Of a stretch of 64,000 nucleotides of DNA, positions 23,723 through 64,000 are shown piece by piece. The notes beneath the pieces are model-generated. The model saw only the letters and a program-made list of their open reading frames with translations, was not told the DNA's origin and ran no database searches. A program made the translations under genes and the position numbers. The DNA is taken from positions 124,001 through 188,000 of IMG/VR virus record IMGVR_UViG_3300035703_000009, one strand, 5' to 3'. The stretch's first letter is position 1; every line of letters begins with the position of its first letter.

Positions 23723-23759
23723 TAGTGTTGGTTATTTTTAAAGGTACAAATAGTCCCAG

Positions 23760-24197
23760 TGGACCCGTCGGGAATCGAACCCGAGTCTTGCTCAGCAAAT
23801 CCAGAGGACTCATTCACAGGCTTAGTCAGTTTTACGACTCTGACAACCGTTTTGGTTTTCTGGGTAGTTTTTATGGTGAGTTTCCTTCTCACCCTCATGA
23901 CGGCTTTCTACATACCTACACGTCTATCCGTAGTGTCTTTGTCAACGATTTCGCCCCCTATATGTCGTTGATCTGGAACGCCCGTGGTCAGCCACAGCTA
24001 TTAAGGGAGCCCTTCCAAGCTTGCACATTTGCTTTCGAAGGGTAAGTGCGACCCATTGCTTACGCGGCTATCGCCATTTCAGCACCAACAAAAGAGTTGC
24101 CGTTTAAATGATTCGATAGGGGATTAAAGAGCTTCCATCTAGCTCTGCCTGCATCATCTCAAAGAACCTAGCTGCCAATCAATTCCTGGTCGAGCCC
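23760..24197 (-). ncRNA. ssrA: tmRNA; tag peptide (A)GNSFVGAEMAIAA* at 24101..24060
   Basis: 5' GGGCTCG pairs with 3' CGGGTCC-A including the G3:U alanine determinant; T-arm TCGGG-TTCGATT-CCCGA; internal tag frame ends in AA-stop. Confidence 0.92.
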
Positions 24198-57287: not shown

Positions 57288-57605
57288 ATGAGCACATTCA
57301 ACACAATACACGTATTTGGATTTGGAAAGATCCAGGTGGTAAAAGAAAACGGCGGAACGCTAGACTCTTCTGCAGTAACTTCCTTAGCTACTTTTGTTGA
57401 CCACATCAAGGGATTTAAACCAGCTGACGTCACACTAAGCGACTATCACGTGATCCACATTTTCAATAATTTTGACATCAAGTACTTGGGTAAGAATGAT
57501 GGTAATTTCAAGGTAAAGAATCAATTTAGCGTAAAGCTTAGCGACGTAGACGCAACTATCTACAATAACTTCGTGAACGAGGTAATTTCCATGTTACCGG
57601 CTTAA
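57288..57605 (+). CDS. Small protein, paralog of 53401..53724
   Basis: Clear sequence similarity to the paralog. Confidence 0.7.
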   Translation: MSTFNTIHVFGFGKIQVVKENGGTLDSSAVTSLATFVDHIKGFKPADVTLSDYHVIHIFNNFDIKYLGKNDGNFKVKNQFSVKLSDVDATIYNNFVNEVISMLPA

Positions 57606-58420
57606 TAGTACTTAAACTCGTCGTAGAACCACTTGTAATTGGTCTTAATCCAGTTACTAGCATATGTTCCTAACACTTCCTTGTAATTTTCCTTTAGAGG
57701 TTCGATTTTCGTACGAATCTGGTGATCGCCATAGATGCCATACACCTCATCATCCTCTTGAGTTATCTGCTCAACTCGATCGAAGTCATGCTCATAATAA
57801 GGCACGCCTAAATACTCGTATACTCTAGCCATTTCTTTGGCAGGGTTGCTAGTAAATTCCTCAAACTTAATGAATAGCATCTTCTTGTTGATTCCCTCCT
57901 TAAAGATCTGCTGCAATCGTTCGACGGCAAGCCCAACAGGCTGACTCTGTGCCCAAATGTCGATGCGTTTCTCGGTGGTGGTGCCTTGCATCGCTGCGTG
58001 GTTCACTATTCCTGAGTCCTTATCCTGGTTCTTTCTAAAGTTCTTCTCCATAGATGCAAAGACTCCGCGTAGGTCTCGTACCATGCACACTATCTTGGGA
58101 TCCGGATAGAAGGAATTAAGGAAGCCATAGTGAATGCCCCAACCGCGGCTCTTGTCCAAGACGTATGGTTTATCAGTTATCTCATTGAAGAAACCAGTTA
58201 ATCCAGCATTGCAGAATCCTGCAAATCCCTTGCGCATCAGGGATGAATCCTGGGCCTTAAATTCAGGCGAGTTAGTGTAATTATTACGTGCAGCGTAGAC
58301 TAACTCTAGGAGGCCTGAAGTAGGCGTCACATAGAATTTTGGGTTCTGACCCATCACGTTCTGGAAAAGGGTGGAACCTGCACGTGGCAGGCTCGCTTGA
58401 AAAAAGATCTTTTGTACCAT
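57602..58420 (-). CDS. Sulfotransferase
   Basis: SLPRAGSTL 5'-PSB loop; MVRD...S 3'-PB motif; IKFEEF..NP. Confidence 0.85.
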   Translation of the reverse strand: MVQKIFFQASLPRAGSTLFQNVMGQNPKFYVTPTSGLLELVYAARNNYTNSPEFKAQDSSLMRKGFAGFCNAGLTGFFNEITDKPYVLDKSRGWGIHYGFLNSFYPDPKIVCMVRDLRGVFASMEKNFRKNQDKDSGIVNHAAMQGTTTEKRIDIWAQSQPVGLAVERLQQIFKEGINKKMLFIKFEEFTSNPAKEMARVYEYLGVPYYEHDFDRVEQITQEDDEVYGIYGDHQIRTKIEPLKENYKEVLGTYASNWIKTNYKWFYDEFKYY

Positions 58421-59304
58421 TAGATTTGATTTATTGAGTTGAGCACCTCTGAGCTGTCAAAGATGTTAAGGTCGGTGAGCGGACACTCATGCAAGTTGCC
58501 GTGGAATCCATAGTCGAACAAGTAGCTGTCGGGCAGCTTAAAGTCCTCTGGTAGGTTCGCGCAGACGTTGTTGTGTATCGAGTAACCAAATATCTTCGGT
58601 GAGGTACCGATCCATAATACTGTAGAAGGTAGCTTTAAGGCAGCGGCTGCGTGCTGCAAGCATGAGTCAATGAGCACTCTCTTGCTAGAGTAAAGCAGCA
58701 AAGAAAATAGCTCCATATTAGACATTGGTGCAAATATCGCTTCTGCTCCAGGAACGGCTTGTCCCTGCTCTCTACACACTTGGATGATGTGATACTGACC
58801 TGAAAAAGCCTTCACTATCTCTTCGACTAGAGAAAACGGCATGTCTCGAGTCCATGAATATGGATATGGTTGGTCTTTGATCGGGCCGCCATTGGATTGG
58901 ATGACCATGATCGGTCGATTGCGAGTCCATTTAGTGTAGCCATACTGACGCTGCCGAATGTTGAACACCAGATCTGGGCTCTCGCCTTCGTATTTTAAGT
59001 CGTATAGCTTACACCAGTTCTCGACAAGAGATAACTGTTTGTGCACGTGCTCGGTGGTAAAATAGGGCTCGTGCTTAAAGATCAAGGTGTCCTGATCCTT
59101 AATGTAGTCCTGATAAAAGTATGGAGTGGCACCGATGCGATACACTCGATCAATGAATCCCAGATTCAAAAAGATCTCTGGATAGGCACACACCACAATG
59201 AGCTTACGATCGGGGTGGTTATTTTTGATGCACTGGGCAACGGCAGTTGCCGCTACATGCTTACCGAGTCCTCCCTCGATGTGAAACAAGCAGTATTTGT
59301 TCAT
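58420..59304 (-). CDS. Glycosyltransferase, GT9 (heptosyltransferase)-like
   Basis: GGLGK...AT and LIDSCLQHAAAAL..PSTVLW. Confidence 0.75.
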   Translation of the reverse strand: MNKYCLFHIEGGLGKHVAATAVAQCIKNNHPDRKLIVVCAYPEIFLNLGFIDRVYRIGATPYFYQDYIKDQDTLIFKHEPYFTTEHVHKQLSLVENWCKLYDLKYEGESPDLVFNIRQRQYGYTKWTRNRPIMVIQSNGGPIKDQPYPYSWTRDMPFSLVEEIVKAFSGQYHIIQVCREQGQAVPGAEAIFAPMSNMELFSLLLYSSKRVLIDSCLQHAAAALKLPSTVLWIGTSPKIFGYSIHNNVCANLPEDFKLPDSYLFDYGFHGNLHECPLTDLNIFDSSEVLNSINQI

Positions 59305-59711
59305 GGGTTAGCTTTATTTTTTAGCAGCTCAATCAATAGATTGTGAGCATTTATATCTACTAAGGATTTCCATTCAGTTTCTCCAGATAGCACCTGTCTA
59401 CGAATTTCTGTCGCAGAGATATTAGCGGTTACTTGGTCTACCTGGATCTCCTTTACTTCATAACCGACCCCTCTACCGTAATTCACGCTGGCTATGTCAG
59501 GTATGATTATCACCTTGACGAGAGGGTTTCCTCGATAAATCTCTTCCCATAGCCGCTTGACTTCCTCTGCAGATAGCGGGTTCTTGTCGTCTGGTTCAAC
59601 GTCGCGAACTGCAATTAGCACTGGCAGCCCCCGGTCTAGGTATTCTTTAAAGATTGTCTGGTGGCCTTTGTGCGGAGACTGATAGCGACCGATAAAAAGG
59701 TTGTATACCAT
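59301..59711 (-). CDS. HIGH-family nucleotidyltransferase (cytidylyl/adenylyltransferase)
   Basis: FIGRYQSPHKGH and ISATEIR motifs. Confidence 0.8.
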   Translation of the reverse strand: MVYNLFIGRYQSPHKGHQTIFKEYLDRGLPVLIAVRDVEPDDKNPLSAEEVKRLWEEIYRGNPLVKVIIIPDIASVNYGRGVGYEVKEIQVDQVTANISATEIRRQVLSGETEWKSLVDINAHNLLIELLKNKANP

Positions 59712-59717
59712 AATTAT

Positions 59718-59963
59718 TTAAGTTTTTATTTTCTTGACACCAAAGGGTATAGCGTACCAAATTCGTTCGTGTATGTAATATGTGATAATCTTAACGAAAA
59801 AATCGGCTGTTCCTATTGATAATCCTAAGTTTATATCATGGGTGACTAATGTTGCAATTAGAGAGGTGATACTTGACGAATATAGTCGATAAGTAATAGA
59901 CTTTAGTAGATGGCGTTTATGGCTAATCCATGTGTCATGGTTAGAAGATAGTTGACTATTCAT
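59718..59963 (-). CDS. DUF2061-like small membrane protein
   Basis: RHLLKSITYR...K...YYIHERIW. Confidence 0.75.
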   Translation of the reverse strand: MNSQLSSNHDTWISHKRHLLKSITYRLYSSSITSLIATLVTHDINLGLSIGTADFFVKIITYYIHERIWYAIPFGVKKIKT

Positions 59964-60384
59964 TAGTAAGGTAATCTACTATTTTTTGAATGCACTCGTC
60001 CAACTTAAAGTCAGTGTTGACTGCTAAGTAGTCGTGTTGAGGCACTGCATAGTCTTTCACAAAGAAGTCTTCGCGACCTCTAATTTGATTGGTGTTGAGG
60101 AAGATCTCAAACACTCTTGCCGAACTCTTTAGCTCTTCGCGTAAGTCTTCGTATGGACTGACCATTGCTAGTATGGCGACATGGTTTTTTGCAGAAAGGA
60201 ATCGCGCTATGTTATATGCATTGGTTAGGTTGCGACGACGACCTTCCTCACTATAGTCCTTGTTCTTAAAGATTTCTCGGAGCTCGTCACCGTCTATTCT
60301 GATGGAGTTAGGTATCAGTTTTTCAAGTTCTCGTGCGATTGTAGTCTTGCCTGAGCCAGGCTGGCCAATCAAGTGAATTATCAT
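59956..60384 (-). CDS. cysC: Adenylyl-sulfate (APS) kinase
   Basis: GQPGSGKTT, IDGDELR, YSEEGRRRN and VSPY...RE. Confidence 0.85.
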   Translation of the reverse strand: MIIHLIGQPGSGKTTIARELEKLIPNSIRIDGDELREIFKNKDYSEEGRRRNLTNAYNIARFLSAKNHVAILAMVSPYEDLREELKSSARVFEIFLNTNQIRGREDFFVKDYAVPQHDYLAVNTDFKLDECIQKIVDYLTNE

Positions 60385-60478: not shown

Positions 60479-60703
60479 ATGTCTATAAAAAACCTAGCTA
60501 CGATGTTGACCGCACTCCTCTTATTTTGTCTACACGCTCTATATAGAGCGTTCGAATTGAAGTTCGGTTGGTTTTTTGTGAACGGTAATAAGCGCGAAGC
60601 ATGGCAGAGATACTTAGAGAAAAAATACGGCGCACAAGCAAATAAAGATCAATCGTTTAGACAGTTTTTTCGCCAACAATTATCTAGGTTCAAGAAAAAG
60701 TAG
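60479..60703 (+). CDS. Small membrane-associated protein
   Basis: Likely ATG at 60479 after ATAAATA; N-terminal hydrophobic helix. Confidence 0.5.
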   Translation: MSIKNLATMLTALLLFCLHALYRAFELKFGWFFVNGNKREAWQRYLEKKYGAQANKDQSFRQFFRQQLSRFKKK

Positions 60704-60789
60704 TACATTAGCTCCATAATTATTTTTTACAAAACTTAAAACTTTTTCCAAAAGTTAGTATAAATAACTAAAAATTGAAACAACCTTCA

Positions 60790-60876
60790 ATGAAAGCTCA
60801 CAAAAATATGATTACGTTAGATTTCAGCCTTCCAGTTGAGGTGGGGACAGATCGTGAGTGTTTATTTAGGAGTTGA
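60790..60876 (+). CDS. Candidate leader peptide MKAHKNMITLDFSLPVEVGTDRECLFRS
   Basis: 28-codon ORF between a promoter motif and a terminator; contains sequence complementary to the terminator stem. Confidence 0.4.
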   Translation: MKAHKNMITLDFSLPVEVGTDRECLFRS

Positions 60877-60898
60877 GATTTATCAGCATAAGATATTG

Positions 60899-60930
60899 AA
60901 AACCTCAACCCATAAAGTTGAGGTTTTTTT
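60899..60930 (+). terminator. Intrinsic terminator/attenuator directly upstream of the tRNA cluster
   Basis: AAAACCTCAAC-ccataaa-GTTGAGGTTTT followed by a T-run. Confidence 0.75.
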
Positions 60931-60944
60931 GTTTTTAATAACTC

Positions 60945-61016
60945 GGTCCATTGGTGTAGTGGCTAACATTCATCCCTGTCACGGATGCGCCGCGAGTTCG
61001 ATTCTCGCATGGACCG
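60945..61016 (+). tRNA. tRNA-Asp(GTC)
   Basis: Full cloverleaf: GGTCCAT/ATGGACC, CATCC-CTGTCAC-GGATG, GCGAG-TTCGATT-CTCGC. Confidence 0.92.
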
Positions 61017-61028
61017 CAGAAACATTTT

Positions 61029-61040
61029 GTTCTTTGAAAA
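61029..61040 (+). promoter_or_regulatory. boxA-like antitermination motif GTTCTTTGAAAA
   Basis: Identical 12-mer also at 63742, both directly before structured RNAs. Confidence 0.5.
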
Positions 61041-61043
61041 AAT

Positions 61044-61116
61044 GCCGAGGTAGCTCAGTTGGGAGAGCATGAGACTCATAAACTCAAGGTCAGCAGTTCG
61101 ATCCTGCTTCTCGGTA
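61044..61116 (+). tRNA. tRNA-Met/Ile2 (CAT)
   Basis: GCCGAGG/TCTCGGT acceptor, GCTC/GAGC D-stem, CTCATAA loop, AGCAG-TTCGATC-CTGCT. Confidence 0.88.
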
Positions 61117-61129
61117 CGAAAGATAAAAT

Positions 61130-61203
61130 TGCGGGGTAGAGAAGCGGTCATCTCGGAAGTCTCATAAGCTTCAGATCGGAGGTTCGAATCCTCCCTCACG
61201 CAA
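61130..61203 (+). tRNA. Initiator-like tRNA-Met(CAT), atypical
   Basis: TGCGGGG 5' end like fMet tRNAs; bulged base in the 3' acceptor strand (CTCACGCA); anticodon stem lacks the three G-C pairs. Confidence 0.7.
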
Positions 61204-61207
61204 CTAA

Positions 61208-61361
61208 GTCAGTAGCAACGTAAAAGTTACTTCGAAATCCATCATAAGGAAGGGGTCGGTGGTTCGAATCCATCTCTCGGCACTATATTAAAAACTCATG
61301 CCGAGATAGCTCAGTGGTCTAGAGCACTTTAAAGAAAAACACTTTTGCACTTTTCTCTGAC
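61208..61361 (+). ncRNA. Y-RNA (YrlA)-like RNA A: scaffold plus permuted tRNA (CAT loop, T arm, closed acceptor, D arm)
   Basis: GTCAG/CTGAC and GTAAAAGT/ACTTTTGC stems; GGTGG-TTCGAAT-CCATC; TCTCGGCA/TGCCGAGA; GCTC/GAGC. Confidence 0.8.
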
Positions 61362-61401
61362 AAAATTTTAAAAGTTCGATCACGTGTAGTACTGTATCAA
61401 C

Positions 61402-61770
61402 ATGAATGCACTAACCGACCGTCTGCTGGAACTGCCAGCCACAATCGCAGAAAATCAACGTCAGATCTTAGATTTGAGCGGTGACCTGCAACTGGTCTCA
61501 AACAACATCGTTGAGATTGAGACCAAGATAAAACTTTCTATTGCCGCAAAAGTAGATGATGCTGGCAAGAAAGTTTACTCGAATGCCGACGCAAGGGAAG
61601 CTGCCTTTGCAGAAGCTGCTGCTGACGACTTTGAGCTCATTGAGCTTAAGGACGCTCGTGACAAGAAGGAGAAGAGCCTTCAGTTGCTAAAGATCGAGTA
61701 TGAAAAGCTTAGCAACGAACAGCGAAACATCCGTGCAACGTTATATTTTCTTGCCGGAAAGAGCGAATAA
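61402..61770 (+). CDS. Coiled-coil hypothetical protein
   Basis: 122 aa, helical hairpin with KVYSNADARE turn. Confidence 0.65.
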   Translation: MNALTDRLLELPATIAENQRQILDLSGDLQLVSNNIVEIETKIKLSIAAKVDDAGKKVYSNADAREAAFAEAAADDFELIELKDARDKKEKSLQLLKIEYEKLSNEQRNIRATLYFLAGKSE

Positions 61771-61863
61771 AAAGTTTTCAATAAACTGAAAATGTTACGA
61801 TAAACCAAGTAAGTTAATCAAACACAAGTAAGTTTAAAAAAATAAAAACCTTGTACTAAAATT

Positions 61864-63597
61864 ATGGCAAAGTTCAGAAACCAAAATCTTCGTAGCACGC
61901 TAGCTGGTATGCAGCCTGATGCGAAGTTGGTTGAAGCAGCAAAGCTGCCGAAGCCAGACACCAAGAATCGTCAAGGAAACGACGCGTACTCACTCGACAA
62001 GTGGCTCCGTCTCTTGACAATGCTCAACACTCTCAAGCTTGAGAGCCAGTTCTATCGTTCTGAGAACGAGACGATGCGCGAGCTCAAAGCGTTAGTCGAT
62101 GAGTGTGCTAAGGAGGACGCTTACTTTGTTGCTCAAGCAATCGTGTACTCACGTTGCGTAGGTGAAGGAATGCGTTCAGTAAACCACTTGGCTGCAAGCT
62201 ACCTAGCGCCACACTGCGCTGGTCAAGAATGGGCAAAGCGTTTCTACTCACTGTGGAACAAGAAGACCCAATCTGGCGGTACCCTCTTCAGACCTGACGA
62301 CATGTCAGAGATCGTTGCATGCTTTTCAGCAATGAATAAGACTGCAGTGACCAACGCGATGAAGAAGGGCTTCAAGGAAGCTCTCGAAAAGATGGACGCG
62401 TACTCGCTCCTCAAGTACAAGAGCTCTCTCGTTGACGTGATCAACCTCGTTCACCCTGACGCTAAGACAGCGAAGGCAAAGGTTGAGATCTCAGCTGACT
62501 CGTACTTGGCCAAGCTACGTGAACTTGAAAAGGCAACTAAGGACAAGACAAAGAGCAAGGCTCTACTCGAAAAGATTAAGCTCAACGAAAGTGCCAGCGG
62601 AACCGTCAAGGTTTCTGCACTGGATGCGATCATGCTGGGTCTATCAGCGTCAGCTGACACCTGGGAGGTAGCACAATCCGATGCAGGCCAAGAGGTTGCA
62701 AAGGCAGTGAAGGAAGGCAAGCTGACCGAGACTCAGGCTGCGGAAGTCCTCAAGGAAGCAAAGGCTGAAAACTGGGACGCCCTCTTAACCGAAGGCAAGC
62801 TCGGAGTTCTGGCCGCTCTACGAAACATCCGTAACATCGTGAAGACCGCGTCAAAGGGAACAACGGTAGACAAGCTCTGCGCATTGCTCTCAGACGGCGA
62901 GGCTATCCGTAAGGGTAAGATCATGCCGTATCAAATTGACATGGCTCACGAAGTGGTCAATGCTGAGTTCAGCAACGTCGACTCTCGTAAGATTGCGCAA
63001 GCTCTCTTAAAGGGTTACGAAGCTGCAGTGCCTAACCTCGCTGAAGCCCTACCAGGCAGAACTCTCGTGATGGTTGACTTCTCTGGCTCAATGTCGACCA
63101 TGGTTGTTGACCCTAACCGCAAGACCAGCTACCGCAGCTCTTGCATGGATAAGGCAGCCCTGATCGCAGCAACAGTCGCAAAGGCAACCAACGCAGACAT
63201 CATCCGCTTCGGCTCCTCTGCAGAATACGTCAGCTGGAATGCAAATTCCGATGTGTTCTCAATCGCAAAGGCAATGAAGCGTGACATGGGAGGTACCAGC
63301 CTAGCCTCTGCATGGATGGCGGCACAAAGATCTGGACGTAAGTACGATCGAGTGTTCATTCTATCAGACAACGAATGTAACAGTGGCTCAAGCTACAAGG
63401 CGTACGAAAGCTACACCAAGGCATGCGGAAGCCCATACGTTTACTCAGTTGACCTGGCAGCGTACGGAACGACCCAACTCGCAGGAGACAAGGTTCGCTT
63501 CTACTACGGCTATGGTTACTCAATGTTCGATGACATCGCGAAGAGCGAGTTCAACCCGAACTACCACCTCGAAAAGGTGAAGAAGATCGTGATCTAA
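61864..63597 (+). CDS. rsr: Ro60/Rsr TROVE-domain RNA-binding protein with vWA domain
   Basis: N..G..AY, YSLLKY, L.DVINLVHP, TWE, ALRNIRNI; MIDAS DFSGS...GGT...LSDNE. Confidence 0.9.
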   Translation: MAKFRNQNLRSTLAGMQPDAKLVEAAKLPKPDTKNRQGNDAYSLDKWLRLLTMLNTLKLESQFYRSENETMRELKALVDECAKEDAYFVAQAIVYSRCVGEGMRSVNHLAASYLAPHCAGQEWAKRFYSLWNKKTQSGGTLFRPDDMSEIVACFSAMNKTAVTNAMKKGFKEALEKMDAYSLLKYKSSLVDVINLVHPDAKTAKAKVEISADSYLAKLRELEKATKDKTKSKALLEKIKLNESASGTVKVSALDAIMLGLSASADTWEVAQSDAGQEVAKAVKEGKLTETQAAEVLKEAKAENWDALLTEGKLGVLAALRNIRNIVKTASKGTTVDKLCALLSDGEAIRKGKIMPYQIDMAHEVVNAEFSNVDSRKIAQALLKGYEAAVPNLAEALPGRTLVMVDFSGSMSTMVVDPNRKTSYRSSCMDKAALIAATVAKATNADIIRFGSSAEYVSWNANSDVFSIAKAMKRDMGGTSLASAWMAAQRSGRKYDRVFILSDNECNSGSSYKAYESYTKACGSPYVYSVDLAAYGTTQLAGDKVRFYYGYGYSMFDDIAKSEFNPNYHLEKVKKIVI

Positions 63598-63611
63598 TCA
63601 GTCACGGCACT

Positions 63612-63641
63612 GGCTAGGAAGAGGGTGACCTCTTCCTAGCC
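63612..63641 (+). other. Perfect 13-bp hairpin with GTGA (GNRA) loop after rsr
   Basis: GGCTAGGAAGAGG-GTGA-CCTCTTCCTAGCC with no U-tract. Confidence 0.7.
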
Positions 63642-63649
63642 GCTAAAAA

Positions 63650-63730
63650 ACCGAGTGGCAAGTTAAGAGTTACTTCTAACATCAATTTGAAATGACTACA
63701 CAAGCACACTCTTAGCAACATTACCTCGGT
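63650..63730 (+). ncRNA. Y-RNA-like RNA B: scaffold with short non-tRNA insert
   Basis: ACCGAG/CTCGGT, TGGCAA, GTTAAGAGT/ACTCTTAGC, TACTTC...ACAC. Confidence 0.7.
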
Positions 63731-63741
63731 AAATTTTTAAA

Positions 63742-63753
63742 GTTCTTTGAAAA
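63742..63753 (+). promoter_or_regulatory. boxA-like motif GTTCTTTGAAAA
   Basis: Second copy, directly before RNA C. Confidence 0.5.
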
Positions 63754-63759
63754 ATAAAA

Positions 63760-63885
63760 ATCAGGTAGCAACGTAAGGGTTACTTCTAGCTCAATTGGTC
63801 GAGCAATTTTCTGCAAAAAAATGGGTTGTGGGTTCGATCCCCACGAAGCGGCGAAAGCCGTACACCCTTGCAACTTTCTCCTGAT
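63760..63885 (+). ncRNA. Y-RNA-like RNA C: scaffold plus unpermuted tRNA body (D arm, GCA anticodon arm, T arm) and a GNRA hairpin
   Basis: ATCAGG/CCTGAT, GTAAGGGT/ACCCTTGC; GCTC/GAGC; ATTTT-CTGCAAA-AAAAT; GTGGG-TTCGATC-CCCAC; CGGC-GAAA-GCCG. Confidence 0.8.
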
Positions 63886-63896
63886 AACTTAAATTA

Positions 63897-64000
63897 AAGC
63901 GTAGCAAGACTAGAGTTACTTCGCATATTGGTTCGAATCCAATATTTGGCACCTGCCAAATTAGACAAATGGTTAAGTCGACGGTCTCATAAACTGTTTT
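63897..64000 (+). ncRNA. Y-RNA-like RNA D (truncated): scaffold plus permuted tRNA (T arm, closed acceptor, D arm, CAT anticodon arm)
   Basis: TAGCAAG...GAGTTACTTC; ATTGG-TTCGAAT-CCAAT; ATTTGGC-ACCT-GCCAAAT; GAC/GTC; ACGGT-CTCATAA-ACTGT. Confidence 0.75.

What the first reader, a model, noticed from the sequence alone, without database searches (positions are those of the whole stretch)
63760..63885. RNA C: unpermuted tRNA(GCA) body grafted to the scaffold through its acceptor stem
CTTC of the invariant TACTTC pairs with GAAG (63845-48) as a 4-bp pseudo-acceptor. It encloses a normal D arm, an all-AU anticodon stem with GCA (Cys) and a T arm, followed by a CGGC-GAAA-GCCG hairpin. There is no free CCA end, so it cannot be aminoacylated. 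This is the opposite topology to YrlA. A tRNA scanner may miscall it as a tRNA-Cys pseudogene.
Basis: partly seen in the sequence, partly recalled or inferred. Interest (0 to 1): 0.75.

Follow-up and report, generated by a model that had tools for sequence, protein, structure and literature searches.

The report
Phage Y RNA carrying whole tRNA shape
A large uncultured phage encodes, just after its Ro60-like gene, a small RNA in which a complete but unchargeable tRNA cloverleaf is built into the Ro60-binding stem, a new layout for a known class of tRNA-mimicking "Y RNAs" that tRNA finders mislabel as tRNA-Cys.

Summary
Window 63760-63885 (+) folds into a long terminal stem that encloses, in native tRNA order, a 4-bp pseudo-acceptor, a D arm, an all-A-U anticodon arm (loop CUGCAAA), a variable loop, a T arm and a GAAA-capped hairpin. 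ARAGORN calls it tRNA-Cys. Rfam tRNA matches only model positions 4-67.

It lies 163 nt downstream of a Ro60/Rsr gene (TROVE + vWA). It is one of five RNAs in this 207-kb phage that share the same terminal scaffold.

I found 38 distinct homologues in viral and metagenome contigs. In the loci checked for rsr they lie just after it on the same strand. Covariation supports every helix: 96.8% of cells are paired, 27 of 36 pairs show compensatory changes, and 0 of 500 shuffles reach this. The 15-48 tertiary pair also covaries.

The "anticodon" is not conserved (14 triplets, including stop-reading UUA and UCA), and a 7-bp acceptor is refuted. It is therefore not a Cys tRNA.

It is best read as a Y RNA whose effector module is an unpermuted tRNA mimic. 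The hairpin probably stacks on the pseudo-acceptor to complete a 13-bp acceptor/T arm.

This topology is opposite to YrlA and resembles a complete version of Deinococcus Yrn1. Expression, Rsr binding and function are untested. I rate it a new variant of a known kind.

The parts
61864..63597 (+). rsr: Ro60/Rsr orthologue, 577 aa
   Evidence: Pfam TROVE PF05731 E 4.7e-8 and vWA_Ro60 PF25045 E 1.7e-7. PHROG 850 RNA-binding protein E 3.5e-37.
63760..63885 (+). RNA C: the whole predicted Y RNA, 126 nt. Ends are inferred from the terminal stem, not mapped.
   Evidence: Sequence. Model R1 gives 136 bits over the full length. Covariation.
63760..63774 (+). Scaffold 5' strand: P1 63760-65, bulged U63766, AG 63767-68, C63769, AA 63770-71, C63772, GU 63773-74. 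It holds the invariant GGUAGYAA.
   Evidence: Invariant columns in A2. RNAalifold pairs 63767-68 with 63878-79, 63770-71 with 63875-76 and 63773-74 with 63870-71.
63775..63780 (+). P2 5' strand AAGGGU, pairs with 63864-69
   Evidence: 5 of 6 pairs show compensatory change.
63779..63786 (+). Invariant GUUACUUC box shared by all five scaffold RNAs of this phage. It contains the YUAY of YrlA, and its CUUC is the pseudo-acceptor 5' strand.
   Evidence: YUAY is described in PMC4201824.
63783..63848 (+). tRNA-like body: pseudo-acceptor 63783-86/63845-48, D arm 63789-63804, anticodon arm 63806-22, variable loop 63823-27, T arm 63828-44
   Evidence: Rfam tRNA 45.4 bits for model positions 4-67. D, anticodon and T helices are 99.5-100% paired with 12 of 14 pairs compensatory. 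Positions 15-48 covary.
63811..63817 (+). 7-nt anticodon-like loop CUGCAAA, with GCA at 63813-15
   Evidence: Among homologues U33 is kept in 34 of 38, a purine at 37 in 36 of 38, and there are 14 different triplets.
63849..63860 (+). CGGC-GAAA-GCCG hairpin, contiguous with the pseudo-acceptor 3' strand. Inferred to stack on it as the top of an acceptor-like arm.
   Evidence: All 3 modelled pairs are compensatory and 100% paired. Helix lengths compensate, 4+4 here against 5+3 in most homologues.
63861..63885 (+). Scaffold 3' strand: junction UAC 63861-63, P2 3' strand 63864-69, GCAAC UUUCU 63870-79, P1 3' strand 63880-85
61208..61361 (+). Sister scaffold RNA upstream of rsr, with YrlA-like order: V arm, T arm, 8-bp closed acceptor hairpin, D arm
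63651..63729 (+). Sister scaffold RNA with no tRNA-like arms (simple hairpin type)
63899..64000 (+). Sister scaffold RNA that runs past the window end to about 64029. Order is T arm, closed acceptor hairpin, D arm, then a complete anticodon arm with loop CUCAUAA.
   Evidence: Rfam gives a partial tRNA match at 63955-64000.
63742..63751 (+). GTTCTTTGAA spacer motif upstream of RNA C. It recurs just upstream of three tRNAs of the array.

Best explanation
RNA C is a non-decoding Y RNA of a phage Ro60 (Rsr) particle.

Its 5' and 3' ends pair into a long, bulged stem that it shares with four sister RNAs of the same phage. By analogy with all characterised Y RNAs, this stem is the Rsr-binding module (inferred).

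The other end is a tRNA mimic in native order (D arm, anticodon arm, variable loop, T arm), with the D/T elbow nucleotides and the 15-48 pair intact (shown by sequence and covariation).

The chain enters and leaves through the 5' strand of the acceptor arm. The 4-bp CUUC/GAAG helix and the GAAA-capped 4-bp hairpin share one continuous 3' strand. They probably stack on the T stem into a closed 13-bp acceptor/T arm (inferred). There is thus no 5' end for RNase P to make, and no CCA end to charge.

It is probably co-transcribed with rsr, its sister RNAs and the flanking tRNAs, and cut out by the tRNA-processing and trimming nucleases (inferred from spacing and the absence of promoter or terminator matches).

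As proposed for YrlA and Yrn1, the tRNA-shaped module then serves as a nuclease-resistant handle. It presents the tRNA elbow, and here also an anticodon arm, to a tRNA- or RNA-binding partner such as host PNPase, tethering that partner to Rsr. The partner is unknown.
For: - rsr lies 163 nt upstream on the same strand.
- Five RNAs in the 207-kb phage share the scaffold and the GUUACUUC box, and related loci carry 3-7 each.
- 39 of 43 loci recovered by a DNA pattern alone hold rsr on the same strand just upstream. The other four are cut at the locus edge.
- The same scaffold occurs next to a 32%-identical Rsr in a 635-kb phage.
- Covariation: 96.8% of cells paired, 27 of 36 pairs compensatory, 0 of 500 shuffles, and slid controls at 44-54%. 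On the structure-blind MAFFT alignment the figures are 96.3% and 20 of 36.
- RNAalifold independently recovers the scaffold, D, anticodon and T helices.
- Positions 15-48 pair as G-C 11, A-U 8 and U-A 8 of 38.
- The anticodon triplet is free: 14 types, with diversity 0.55-0.69 per column, as high as the flanks.
- The first base of the 7-bp acceptor extension pairs in only 3 of 38.
- Acceptor plus hairpin length compensates, 4+4 against 5+3.
- The phage has 34 other tRNAs covering all 20 amino acids, including a real tRNA-Cys.
- No sigma-70 promoter match and no terminator-like site was found from rsr to 1.5 kb downstream.
- Literature: Y RNA modularity, tRNA-like YrlA, Yrn1 orientation and the PNPase tether (PMC4201824; 10.1101/312249). 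Phage phiLo Ro60, its Yrl RNAs and host PNPase form a complex (PMC12135203).
Against: - There is no expression or end-mapping data. The only 'RNA' run looks like DNA, and all runs were contigs.
- Rsr binding is not shown.
- The published Rsr motif GNCGAAN0-1G / CGAA is not present as such; this family has UAGYAAnG.
- No Rfam family other than tRNA matches.
- Single-sequence thermodynamics does not favour the pseudo-acceptor or the A-U anticodon stem.
- Some paralogues lack the hairpin altogether (L010 3263, L037 1471, L060 and L066), so a complete acceptor arm is not obligatory.
- The phage record (81% complete) has no PNPase, RtcB or CCA-adding enzyme, so any partner would have to be a host protein.
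Confidence: 0.65

Rival explanations
1. It is a genuine or recently decayed tRNA-Cys gene that is excised from the transcript and used in translation. The flanking similarity to the other RNAs would be incidental.
For: ARAGORN calls tRNA-Cys(gca). Rfam tRNA is above its gathering score. The loop CUGCAAA is identical to that of the phage's real tRNA-Cys. The RNA sits in a tRNA array.
Against: - The Rfam match stops at model positions 4-67.
- The 7-bp acceptor would need U-G, U-G and A-C at its top. Its first added base pairs in only 3 of 38 homologues, while the competing hairpin covaries perfectly.
- There is no discriminator or CCA.
- The triplet changes among orthologues, with 14 types including stop-reading UUA and UCA.
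- The acceptor 5' strand is part of a box that is invariant in RNAs without any tRNA body.
- The phage has its own tRNA-Cys, only 58% identical.
Confidence: 0.03
2. It has the same Y RNA identity, but the module works as a decoy or sensor. An unchargeable tRNA look-alike with an exposed anticodon loop, stabilised by Rsr, soaks up or reports host tRNA-cleaving defence nucleases. Its triplet changes as the targets change.
For: - A complete 7-nt loop with U33 and purine 37 is kept while positions 34-36 vary freely, even between near-identical homologues. Position 35 is the most often changed site in close pairs.
- Published YrlA lacks an anticodon loop, so its retention here asks for a reason.
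- The phage carries a full tRNA set, typical of phages that face tRNA depletion.
- Ro/TROVE proteins with a tRNA-like partner have been proposed as an RNA-repair platform in jumbo phages (PMC7824862).
Against: - Triplet diversity equals that of unconstrained flanks, so neutral drift explains it.
- The loops do not consistently copy real tRNA loops.
- No RNA ligase of the RtcB type is present in the phage.
- No nuclease or host is known.
- No paper proposing this for Y RNAs was found.
Confidence: 0.12
3. It has the same Y RNA identity, but the tRNA shape has no partner of its own. It is only a compact, nuclease-resistant cap and a processing signal that lets the tRNA maturation machinery release and stabilise the Rsr-binding stem. 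The RNA's role is to gate Rsr.
For: - The protective role is one of two options offered for YrlA.
- Sister RNAs with very different modules, or with none, share the scaffold.
- Some paralogues drop the hairpin.
- The GTTCTTTGAA spacer motif is shared with tRNAs.
Against: Strong purifying selection acts on elbow nucleotides, the 15-48 pair and a paired anticodon arm across Rsr divergence down to 36-55% identity. That is more constraint than a cap should need. Each phage also keeps several distinct tRNA-like designs side by side.
Confidence: 0.17

Closest known systems
YrlA RNAs (Salmonella, Mycobacterium smegmatis, mycobacteriophages; Chen et al. 2014, PMC4201824; structure in bioRxiv 10.1101/312249)
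   Same: - Encoded next to rsr on the same strand.
- The 5' and 3' ends form the protein-binding stem.
- A YUAY motif follows the 5' strand.
- The effector module is a tRNA mimic with canonical T and D arms and no free CCA end.
- Several Y RNAs occur per locus, sometimes co-transcribed with tRNAs.
   Different: - YrlA is joined at the anticodon stem and runs V arm, T arm, closed acceptor hairpin, D arm, with no anticodon loop. RNA C is joined within the acceptor arm and runs D, anticodon arm, V, T, with a complete 7-nt anticodon loop.
- The 5' motif is UAGYAAnG, not GNCGAAN0-1G.
Deinococcus radiodurans Yrn1
   Same: As described in PMC4201824, the D-like and T elements are in the opposite orientation to YrlA. 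The stem-loop between them sits at the anticodon-arm position, with a 5-bp stem. Both strands of the protein-binding helix are conserved.
   Different: - Yrn1 has no full D arm, a 6-nt loop, no variable arm and no detected dihydrouridine. RNA C is a full cloverleaf that passes the Rfam tRNA threshold.
- Yrn1 has no capped hairpin completing an acceptor arm.
- I could not compare the sequences directly.
Yrl1/Yrl2 of Thermus phage phiLo with phage Ro60 and host PNPase (PMC12135203)
   Same: Phage-encoded Ro60 has its own Y-like RNAs beside the gene. This gives a precedent for a phage RNP that recruits host PNPase.
   Different: The phiLo RNAs are described as stem-bulge-stem RNAs with a CGAA motif. 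No tRNA-like domain is mentioned in that paper: 'tRNA-like' occurs 0 times.
Canonical tRNA / tRNA-Cys
   Same: The D, anticodon and T arms, elbow nucleotides, U8, A14, U33, purine 37, and a variable loop of 5 nt.
   Different: The acceptor helix is only 4 bp and is continuous with other helices. There is no 5' or 3' terminus and no CCA. The anticodon stem is all A-U. The triplet is not conserved among orthologues.
Circularly permuted tRNA genes (Cyanidioschyzon merolae), cited in 10.1101/312249
   Same: The chain termini lie somewhere other than the top of the acceptor stem, which is closed by a loop.
   Different: Those are processed through a circular intermediate into working tRNAs. Here nothing suggests such processing, and the phage already has a full tRNA set.

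Membership tests
canonical tRNA | Cloverleaf with D, anticodon and T arms and the conserved tertiary nucleotides | tested here: met
   Rfam RF00005 scores 45.4 bits against a gathering score of 29. The three arms are 99.5-100% paired with compensatory changes. Positions 15-48 covary.
canonical tRNA | 7-bp acceptor stem with a free 5' end and a 3' discriminator/CCA site | tested here: not met
   The helix is 4 bp here and 4-5 bp in homologues, then runs into a covarying hairpin. The first added base of the 7-bp alternative pairs in 3 of 38. There is no CCA. The Rfam match is local, positions 4-67.
canonical tRNA | Anticodon conserved among orthologues (decoding identity) | tested here: not met
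   There are 14 triplets in 38 distinct homologues. GCA appears 9 times, UUA 5, UCA 4, UUG 4 and GAA 4.
canonical tRNA | Aminoacylation and use on the ribosome | not testable with these tools
   Needs charging assays.
Y RNA (general) | Encoded beside Ro60/rsr on the same strand | tested here: met
   It lies 163 nt downstream of rsr. 39 of 43 pattern-found loci have rsr just upstream on the same strand.
Y RNA (general) | Long stem formed by the 5' and 3' ends, with a conserved bulged helix, plus a second module of loops or stem-loops | tested here: met
   P1 and P2 covary, with 9-10 compensatory pairs. Invariant GG-U-AG / CU-CC has a bulged U.
Y RNA (general) | Bound and stabilised by Ro60/Rsr | not testable with these tools
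   Needs pull-down or gel-shift with the phage Rsr.
YrlA subfamily | GNCGAAN0-1G motif near the 5' end | tested here: not met
   The family has invariant GGUAGYAAnG, that is GYAA in place of CGAA. The resemblance is partial only.
YrlA subfamily | Conserved YUAY after the 5' strand | tested here: met
   UUAC sits within the invariant GUUACUUC.
YrlA subfamily | tRNA-like domain ordered V, T, closed acceptor stem-loop, D and joined at the anticodon stem, with no anticodon loop | tested here: not met
   RNA C runs D, anticodon arm, V, T and is joined in the acceptor arm. The sister RNAs at 61208-61361 and at C1:188419-188557 do have the YrlA order.
YrlA subfamily | Pseudouridine 55 and dihydrouridine made by TruB and DusA | not testable with these tools
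   The substrate nucleotides (GGUUCGAUC T loop, G18 G19, U in the D loop) are present, but modification needs experiment.
Yrn1-like Y RNA | D and T elements in native order with a stem-loop at the anticodon-arm position | tested here: met
   The order is shown by the Rfam alignment. The Yrn1 description is taken from PMC4201824. No sequence comparison with Yrn1 was made.

The most novel reading that the evidence does not exclude
These phages equip one Ro60 protein with a panel of tRNA mimics that expose different faces of the tRNA. RNA C, the only common design with a native-order body and a free, fast-changing anticodon loop but no chargeable end, would be a Ro60-stabilised bait for host tRNA-cleaving defence nucleases. 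It could act as a decoy, or as a sensor that couples cleavage to Rsr/PNPase action. If so, Y RNA tRNA mimicry would be a counter-defence device.
Probability: 0.12. Interest if true: 0.85.

Novelty: new variant of a known kind. Interest (0 to 1): 0.6.

Why it matters
What the tRNA-like module of bacterial Y RNAs does has been open since 2014. This phage clade offers a natural experiment. One Rsr protein is served by several scaffold-sharing RNAs whose modules are no tRNA at all, YrlA-type permuted tRNAs, a tRNA permuted at the variable loop, and RNA C.

RNA C is a native-order cloverleaf with an intact anticodon arm and an acceptor arm closed by a tetraloop. The tRNA-like designs all share the D/T elbow and an acceptor-like helix, which points to the surface that matters. 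That makes partner hunting with defined variants feasible.

There is also a practical consequence. ARAGORN labels members of this family tRNA-Cys, tRNA-Leu, tRNA-Stop(tta) or tRNA-SeC(tca). This inflates phage tRNA counts and could be mistaken for suppressor tRNAs when stop-codon reassignment is inferred.

Tried and rejected
- **Expression.** Two run searches and the single read-laying run (44) gave only assembled contigs from DNA-like runs of related phages. There was no information on transcripts or ends. The stretch covering RNA C showed no listed differences in those relatives while its flanks did, but this is weak evidence.
- **GenBank phages.** There is no DNA match to the RNA cluster. 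The nearest Rsr is only 32% identical.
- **Reference prokaryote genomes.** The pattern gave two hits, both chance matches with no tRNA-like body. Two of the metagenome hits (L069, L078) were also chance.
- **Rfam.** At E up to 10 over 60500-64000, nothing matched but tRNA.
- **Single-sequence folding.** It does not reproduce the pseudo-acceptor or the anticodon stem.
- **RNAalifold on the MAFFT alignment.** It misses the pseudo-acceptor and hairpin because 4+4 and 5+3 variants are out of register. The model-based alignment resolves this, but it is fitted to the structure.
- **Possible partners in the phage.** RtcB, the CCA-adding enzyme family and the RNase PH/PNPase domain are absent. There are only two sub-threshold ligase-domain hits far from the locus.
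- **Upstream neighbours.** These are sulfotransferase, glycosyltransferase-like, cytidylyltransferase-like and APS-kinase genes, unrelated to RNA.
- **The 122-aa ORF between the first Y RNA and rsr.** It is kept in only 5 of 32 related loci, so it was dropped as a partner candidate.
- **Automatic sorting of all scaffold RNAs by arm order.** It was too crude, with poor 3' end detection, to quote as counts.
- **Diversifying selection on the triplet.** Its diversity is no higher than that of free positions, so the test is inconclusive.

Full report
**1. What is in the sequence**

The window is positions 124001-188000 of a 207,110-bp linear viral record. It is estimated to be 81% complete, has 42% G+C, and has no close relative among deposited phages.

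Window 63760-63885 (+) reads as follows:
- P1: AUCAGG 63760-65 with CCUGAU 63880-85.
- A conserved, imperfect helix. U63766 is bulged. A63767-U63879 and G63768-C63878 pair. C63769 and U63877 are mismatched. A63770-U63876 and A63771-U63875 pair. A small internal loop follows, then G63773-C63871 and U63774-G63870.
- P2: AAGGGU 63775-80 with ACCCUU 63864-69.
- Two junction bases, U63781 and A63782.
- CUUC 63783-86 pairing with GAAG 63845-48.
- U8 and A9 at 63787-88.
- D arm 63789-63804.
- A26 at 63805.
- Anticodon arm 63806-22, with five A-U pairs and loop CUGCAAA.
- Variable loop GGGUU 63823-27.
- T arm 63828-44, loop UUCGAUC.
- With no intervening base, the hairpin CGGC-GAAA-GCCG 63849-60.
- Junction UAC 63861-63, then back into P2.

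ARAGORN calls 63779-63853 tRNA-Cys(gca). The Rfam tRNA model scores 45.4 bits but aligns only positions 4-67, exactly CUUC to GAAG. No other Rfam family matches, even at E up to 10.

**2. Surroundings**

The gene ending 163 nt upstream (61864-63597, +) is a Ro60/Rsr orthologue with TROVE and Ro60-type vWA domains.

The phage has five RNAs sharing the same termini and the invariant box GUUACUUC:
- 61208-61361, upstream of rsr, with the YrlA-like order V, T, closed 8-bp acceptor hairpin, D.
- 63651-63729, with no tRNA-like arms.
- RNA C.
- 63899 to about 64029, with T arm, closed acceptor hairpin, D arm and then a complete anticodon arm with loop CUCAUAA.
- One beyond the window, at C1:188419-188557, with YrlA-like order.

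These RNAs are interleaved at spacings of about 5-30 nt with genuine tRNAs. The phage has 34 other tRNA calls covering all 20 amino acids, including a real tRNA-Cys(GCA) at C1:192323-192395.

No sigma-70-type promoter match, and no terminator-like site on this strand, occurs between rsr and a point 1.5 kb downstream. This fits a polycistronic rsr / Y RNA / tRNA transcript like the one described in Deinococcus. That is an inference.

A spacer motif, GTTCTTTGAA, lies just upstream of RNA C and of three tRNAs.

**3. Homologues**

Searching viral contigs with the Rsr protein gave 32 loci at 34-79% identity. GTTACTTC occurs 3-7 times in most of them, almost only on the rsr strand, against about 0.15 expected per strand.

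A DNA pattern specific to the RNA C design found 19 viral and 27 metagenome stretches, mostly from lake, freshwater and groundwater samples. It also found two chance hits in reference prokaryote genomes.

Of the 43 true pattern-found loci, 39 carry rsr on the same strand, in most just upstream of the RNA. The other four are cut at the locus edge. A covariance model (R1) scores 40 full-length members at 93-155 bits, of which 38 are distinct.

The same scaffold, without the RNA C design, lies beside a 32%-identical Rsr in a 635-kb uncultured phage.

**4. Is the fold real?**

On the structure-blind MAFFT alignment of 30 sequences, the proposed structure has 96.3% of cells paired and 20 of 36 pairs with changes on both sides. 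No shuffle of 500 reaches any measure, and slid controls fall to 44-56%.

On the model-based alignment of 38 distinct sequences, the figures are 96.8% and 27 of 36 pairs:

| Helix | Cells paired | Pairs with compensatory change |
|---|---|---|
| D stem | 100% | 4 of 4 |
| Anticodon stem | 99.5% | 5 of 5 |
| T stem | 100% | 3 of 5 (the rest invariant) |
| Hairpin | 100% | 3 of 3 |
| Pseudo-acceptor | 90% | 2 of 5 |
| P1 | not extracted | 5 of 8 |
| P2 | not extracted | 5 of 6 |

This second alignment is fitted to the structure, so it leans towards it. RNAalifold, given no structure, recovers the scaffold, D, anticodon and T helices. It misses the pseudo-acceptor and hairpin because two length variants are out of register in MAFFT.

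The tertiary 15-48 pair also covaries: G15 always goes with C48 (11 of 11) and U48 always with A15 (8 of 8). This argues for a true L-shaped fold.

Single-sequence thermodynamics alone does not give the 4-bp helix or the A-U anticodon stem. These two therefore rest on comparative evidence.

**5. Not a Cys tRNA**

- The triplet at the anticodon position takes 14 values in 38 homologues. GCA appears only 9 times, and UUA and UCA, which would read stop codons, appear 9 times together. U33 (34 of 38), purine 37 (36 of 38) and the 7-nt loop size are kept.
- Per-column diversity at positions 34-36 (0.55-0.69) equals that of unconstrained positions.
- Extending the acceptor to 7 bp would need the invariant U, U, A of the box to pair with the hairpin's 5' strand, which varies (CGC, CGGC, CAC, CCC, GGC). 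The first such pair forms in 3 of 38.
- The body is 58% identical to the phage's real tRNA-Cys and 70% to its tRNA-Thr, so it is not a recent copy of tRNA-Cys.

**6. A refinement: the hairpin as the top of the acceptor arm**

The pseudo-acceptor 3' strand and the hairpin 5' strand are contiguous. In the window the helices are 4 + 4 bp, and in most homologues 5 + 3 bp. In the other variants the two helices add up to about 7-8 bp, a few with one unpaired A between them.

With the 5-bp T stem this gives 13 stacked pairs in the window and the majority variant, against 12 in a tRNA. I infer that the module is a tRNA whose acceptor arm is closed by a tetraloop. The scaffold would enter and leave through a break in the arm's 5' strand, about four pairs below the cap.

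This would leave no site for RNase P and no 3' end for CCA addition or charging. It remains an inference. Four paralogues lack the hairpin entirely.

**7. Comparison with what is known**

YrlA RNAs are encoded near rsr, have a GNCGAAN0-1G motif and a YUAY, and carry a tRNA mimic ordered V, T, closed acceptor stem-loop, D. They are joined at the anticodon stem and lack an anticodon loop.

RNA C shares the location, the modular plan, the YUAY and the lack of a CCA end. It has the opposite order, a complete anticodon arm and UAGYAAnG in place of the CGAA-type motif. I do not file it as YrlA.

Deinococcus Yrn1 is described with the opposite orientation to YrlA and a stem-loop at the anticodon-arm position. 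It has only partial D features, a 6-nt loop and no variable arm. RNA C is like a complete version of that layout, evidently arisen within a scaffold family whose other members are YrlA-like.

A phage precedent for function exists. phiLo Ro60 with its two Yrl RNAs binds host PNPase.

Five literature searches found no description of a Y RNA with a native-order full cloverleaf. Neither did the 2026 preprint on new bacterial tRNA mimics. The library is incomplete, and two Wolin-laboratory reviews could not be read.

**8. Mechanism**

Shown:
- location;
- scaffold sharing;
- fold;
- lack of tRNA termini;
- lack of decoding identity.

Inferred:
- Rsr binds the scaffold;
- the RNA is released from a polycistronic precursor;
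- the tRNA-shaped module is a stable handle that presents the elbow and an anticodon arm to a tRNA- or RNA-binding partner, host PNPase being the only precedent.

Two alternatives for the module's role cannot be separated here: bait for tRNA-cleaving defence nucleases, or a mere protective cap. The phage itself encodes no PNPase, RtcB or CCA-adding enzyme in the 81% of the genome available.

**9. Verdict**

RNA C is a new topological variant of a known kind, the tRNA-mimicking Y RNA. The family is well supported and so far purely metagenomic. It also produces false tRNA calls, including false suppressor-tRNA calls.

Interest is moderate to high for RNA biologists. It is limited by the absence of any expression or binding data.

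Noticed in passing
L003:6229-6366, L007:6746-6883, L023:7518-7652, L020:6316-6451, L025:5900-6034: Relatives carry another scaffold RNA class in which a complete tRNA with its own 7-bp acceptor stem follows the GUUACUUC box directly. ARAGORN anticodons are tgg, tag, cag, gtg and gct. R1 scores are 60-77 bits. This phage lacks that class. Unlike RNA C, it might be a substrate for RNase P.
   Followed up: partly
window 63899-64000 (continues to about 64029; L001:1800-1930): The sister RNA is a tRNA permuted at the variable loop: T arm, closed acceptor hairpin, D arm, then a full anticodon arm with loop CUCAUAA (CAU). Published YrlA has no anticodon loop. The CAU loop recurs in several homologues (L003 6003, L023 7390).
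   Followed up: partly
L004:4036-4107, L006:5950-6022, L011:3197-3269: ARAGORN labels RNA C homologues tRNA-Stop(tta) and tRNA-SeC(tca). Such calls could be misread as suppressor tRNAs and as evidence for stop-codon reassignment in phage genomes.
   Followed up: partly
window 63742-63751, 61029-61038; C1:190635 and C1:191107: The motif GTTCTTTGAA, or a one-mismatch variant, lies 5-18 nt upstream of RNA C and of three tRNAs. It also lies before RNA C homologues in divergent relatives (L020, L027, L032). It may be a promoter element or processing signal of the tRNA / Y RNA array.
   Followed up: partly
window 23757-24197 (-): A phage-encoded tmRNA is found by Rfam (51.8 bits, gathering score 47) but not called by ARAGORN.
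   Followed up: no
window 63612-63641: A perfect 13-bp stem-loop (GGCTAGGAAGAGG, loop GTGA, CCTCTTCCTAGCC) lies 15 nt after the rsr stop and is followed by A-rich sequence, not a T run. Relatives in public runs differ at several positions within it. It may be a processing site or an mRNA 3' protection element.
   Followed up: no
L083:5519-5590 (LR745206.1, 635-kb uncultured phage): Two RNAs with the same scaffold (GUAGUAA, GAUACUUC, ACAC, UUUCCUC) lie just upstream of an Rsr only 32% identical to this one. The scaffold therefore tracks a deep phage Rsr lineage.
   Followed up: partly
A4 columns 24 and 117-118 (window 63780 and 63863-64): Where the box reads GAUAC instead of GUUAC, the 3' junction reads AUGC instead of ACAC. 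The U-A pair is replaced by A opposite G, with a neighbouring C to U change. This is a correlated change in the three-way junction, suggesting a non-canonical motif there.
   Followed up: no
window 57602-60384 (-): A cluster of sulfotransferase, glycosyltransferase-like, cytidylyltransferase-like, DUF2061 membrane protein and APS-kinase genes lies just upstream of the tRNA / Y RNA array. It looks like an auxiliary sulfation module.
   Followed up: no
C1:188857-188932 (L001:2758-2833): ARAGORN makes an odd call, tRNA-His(atg), with the anticodon at position 29 and an encoded CCA. It is probably a miscalled or unusual tRNA.
   Followed up: no
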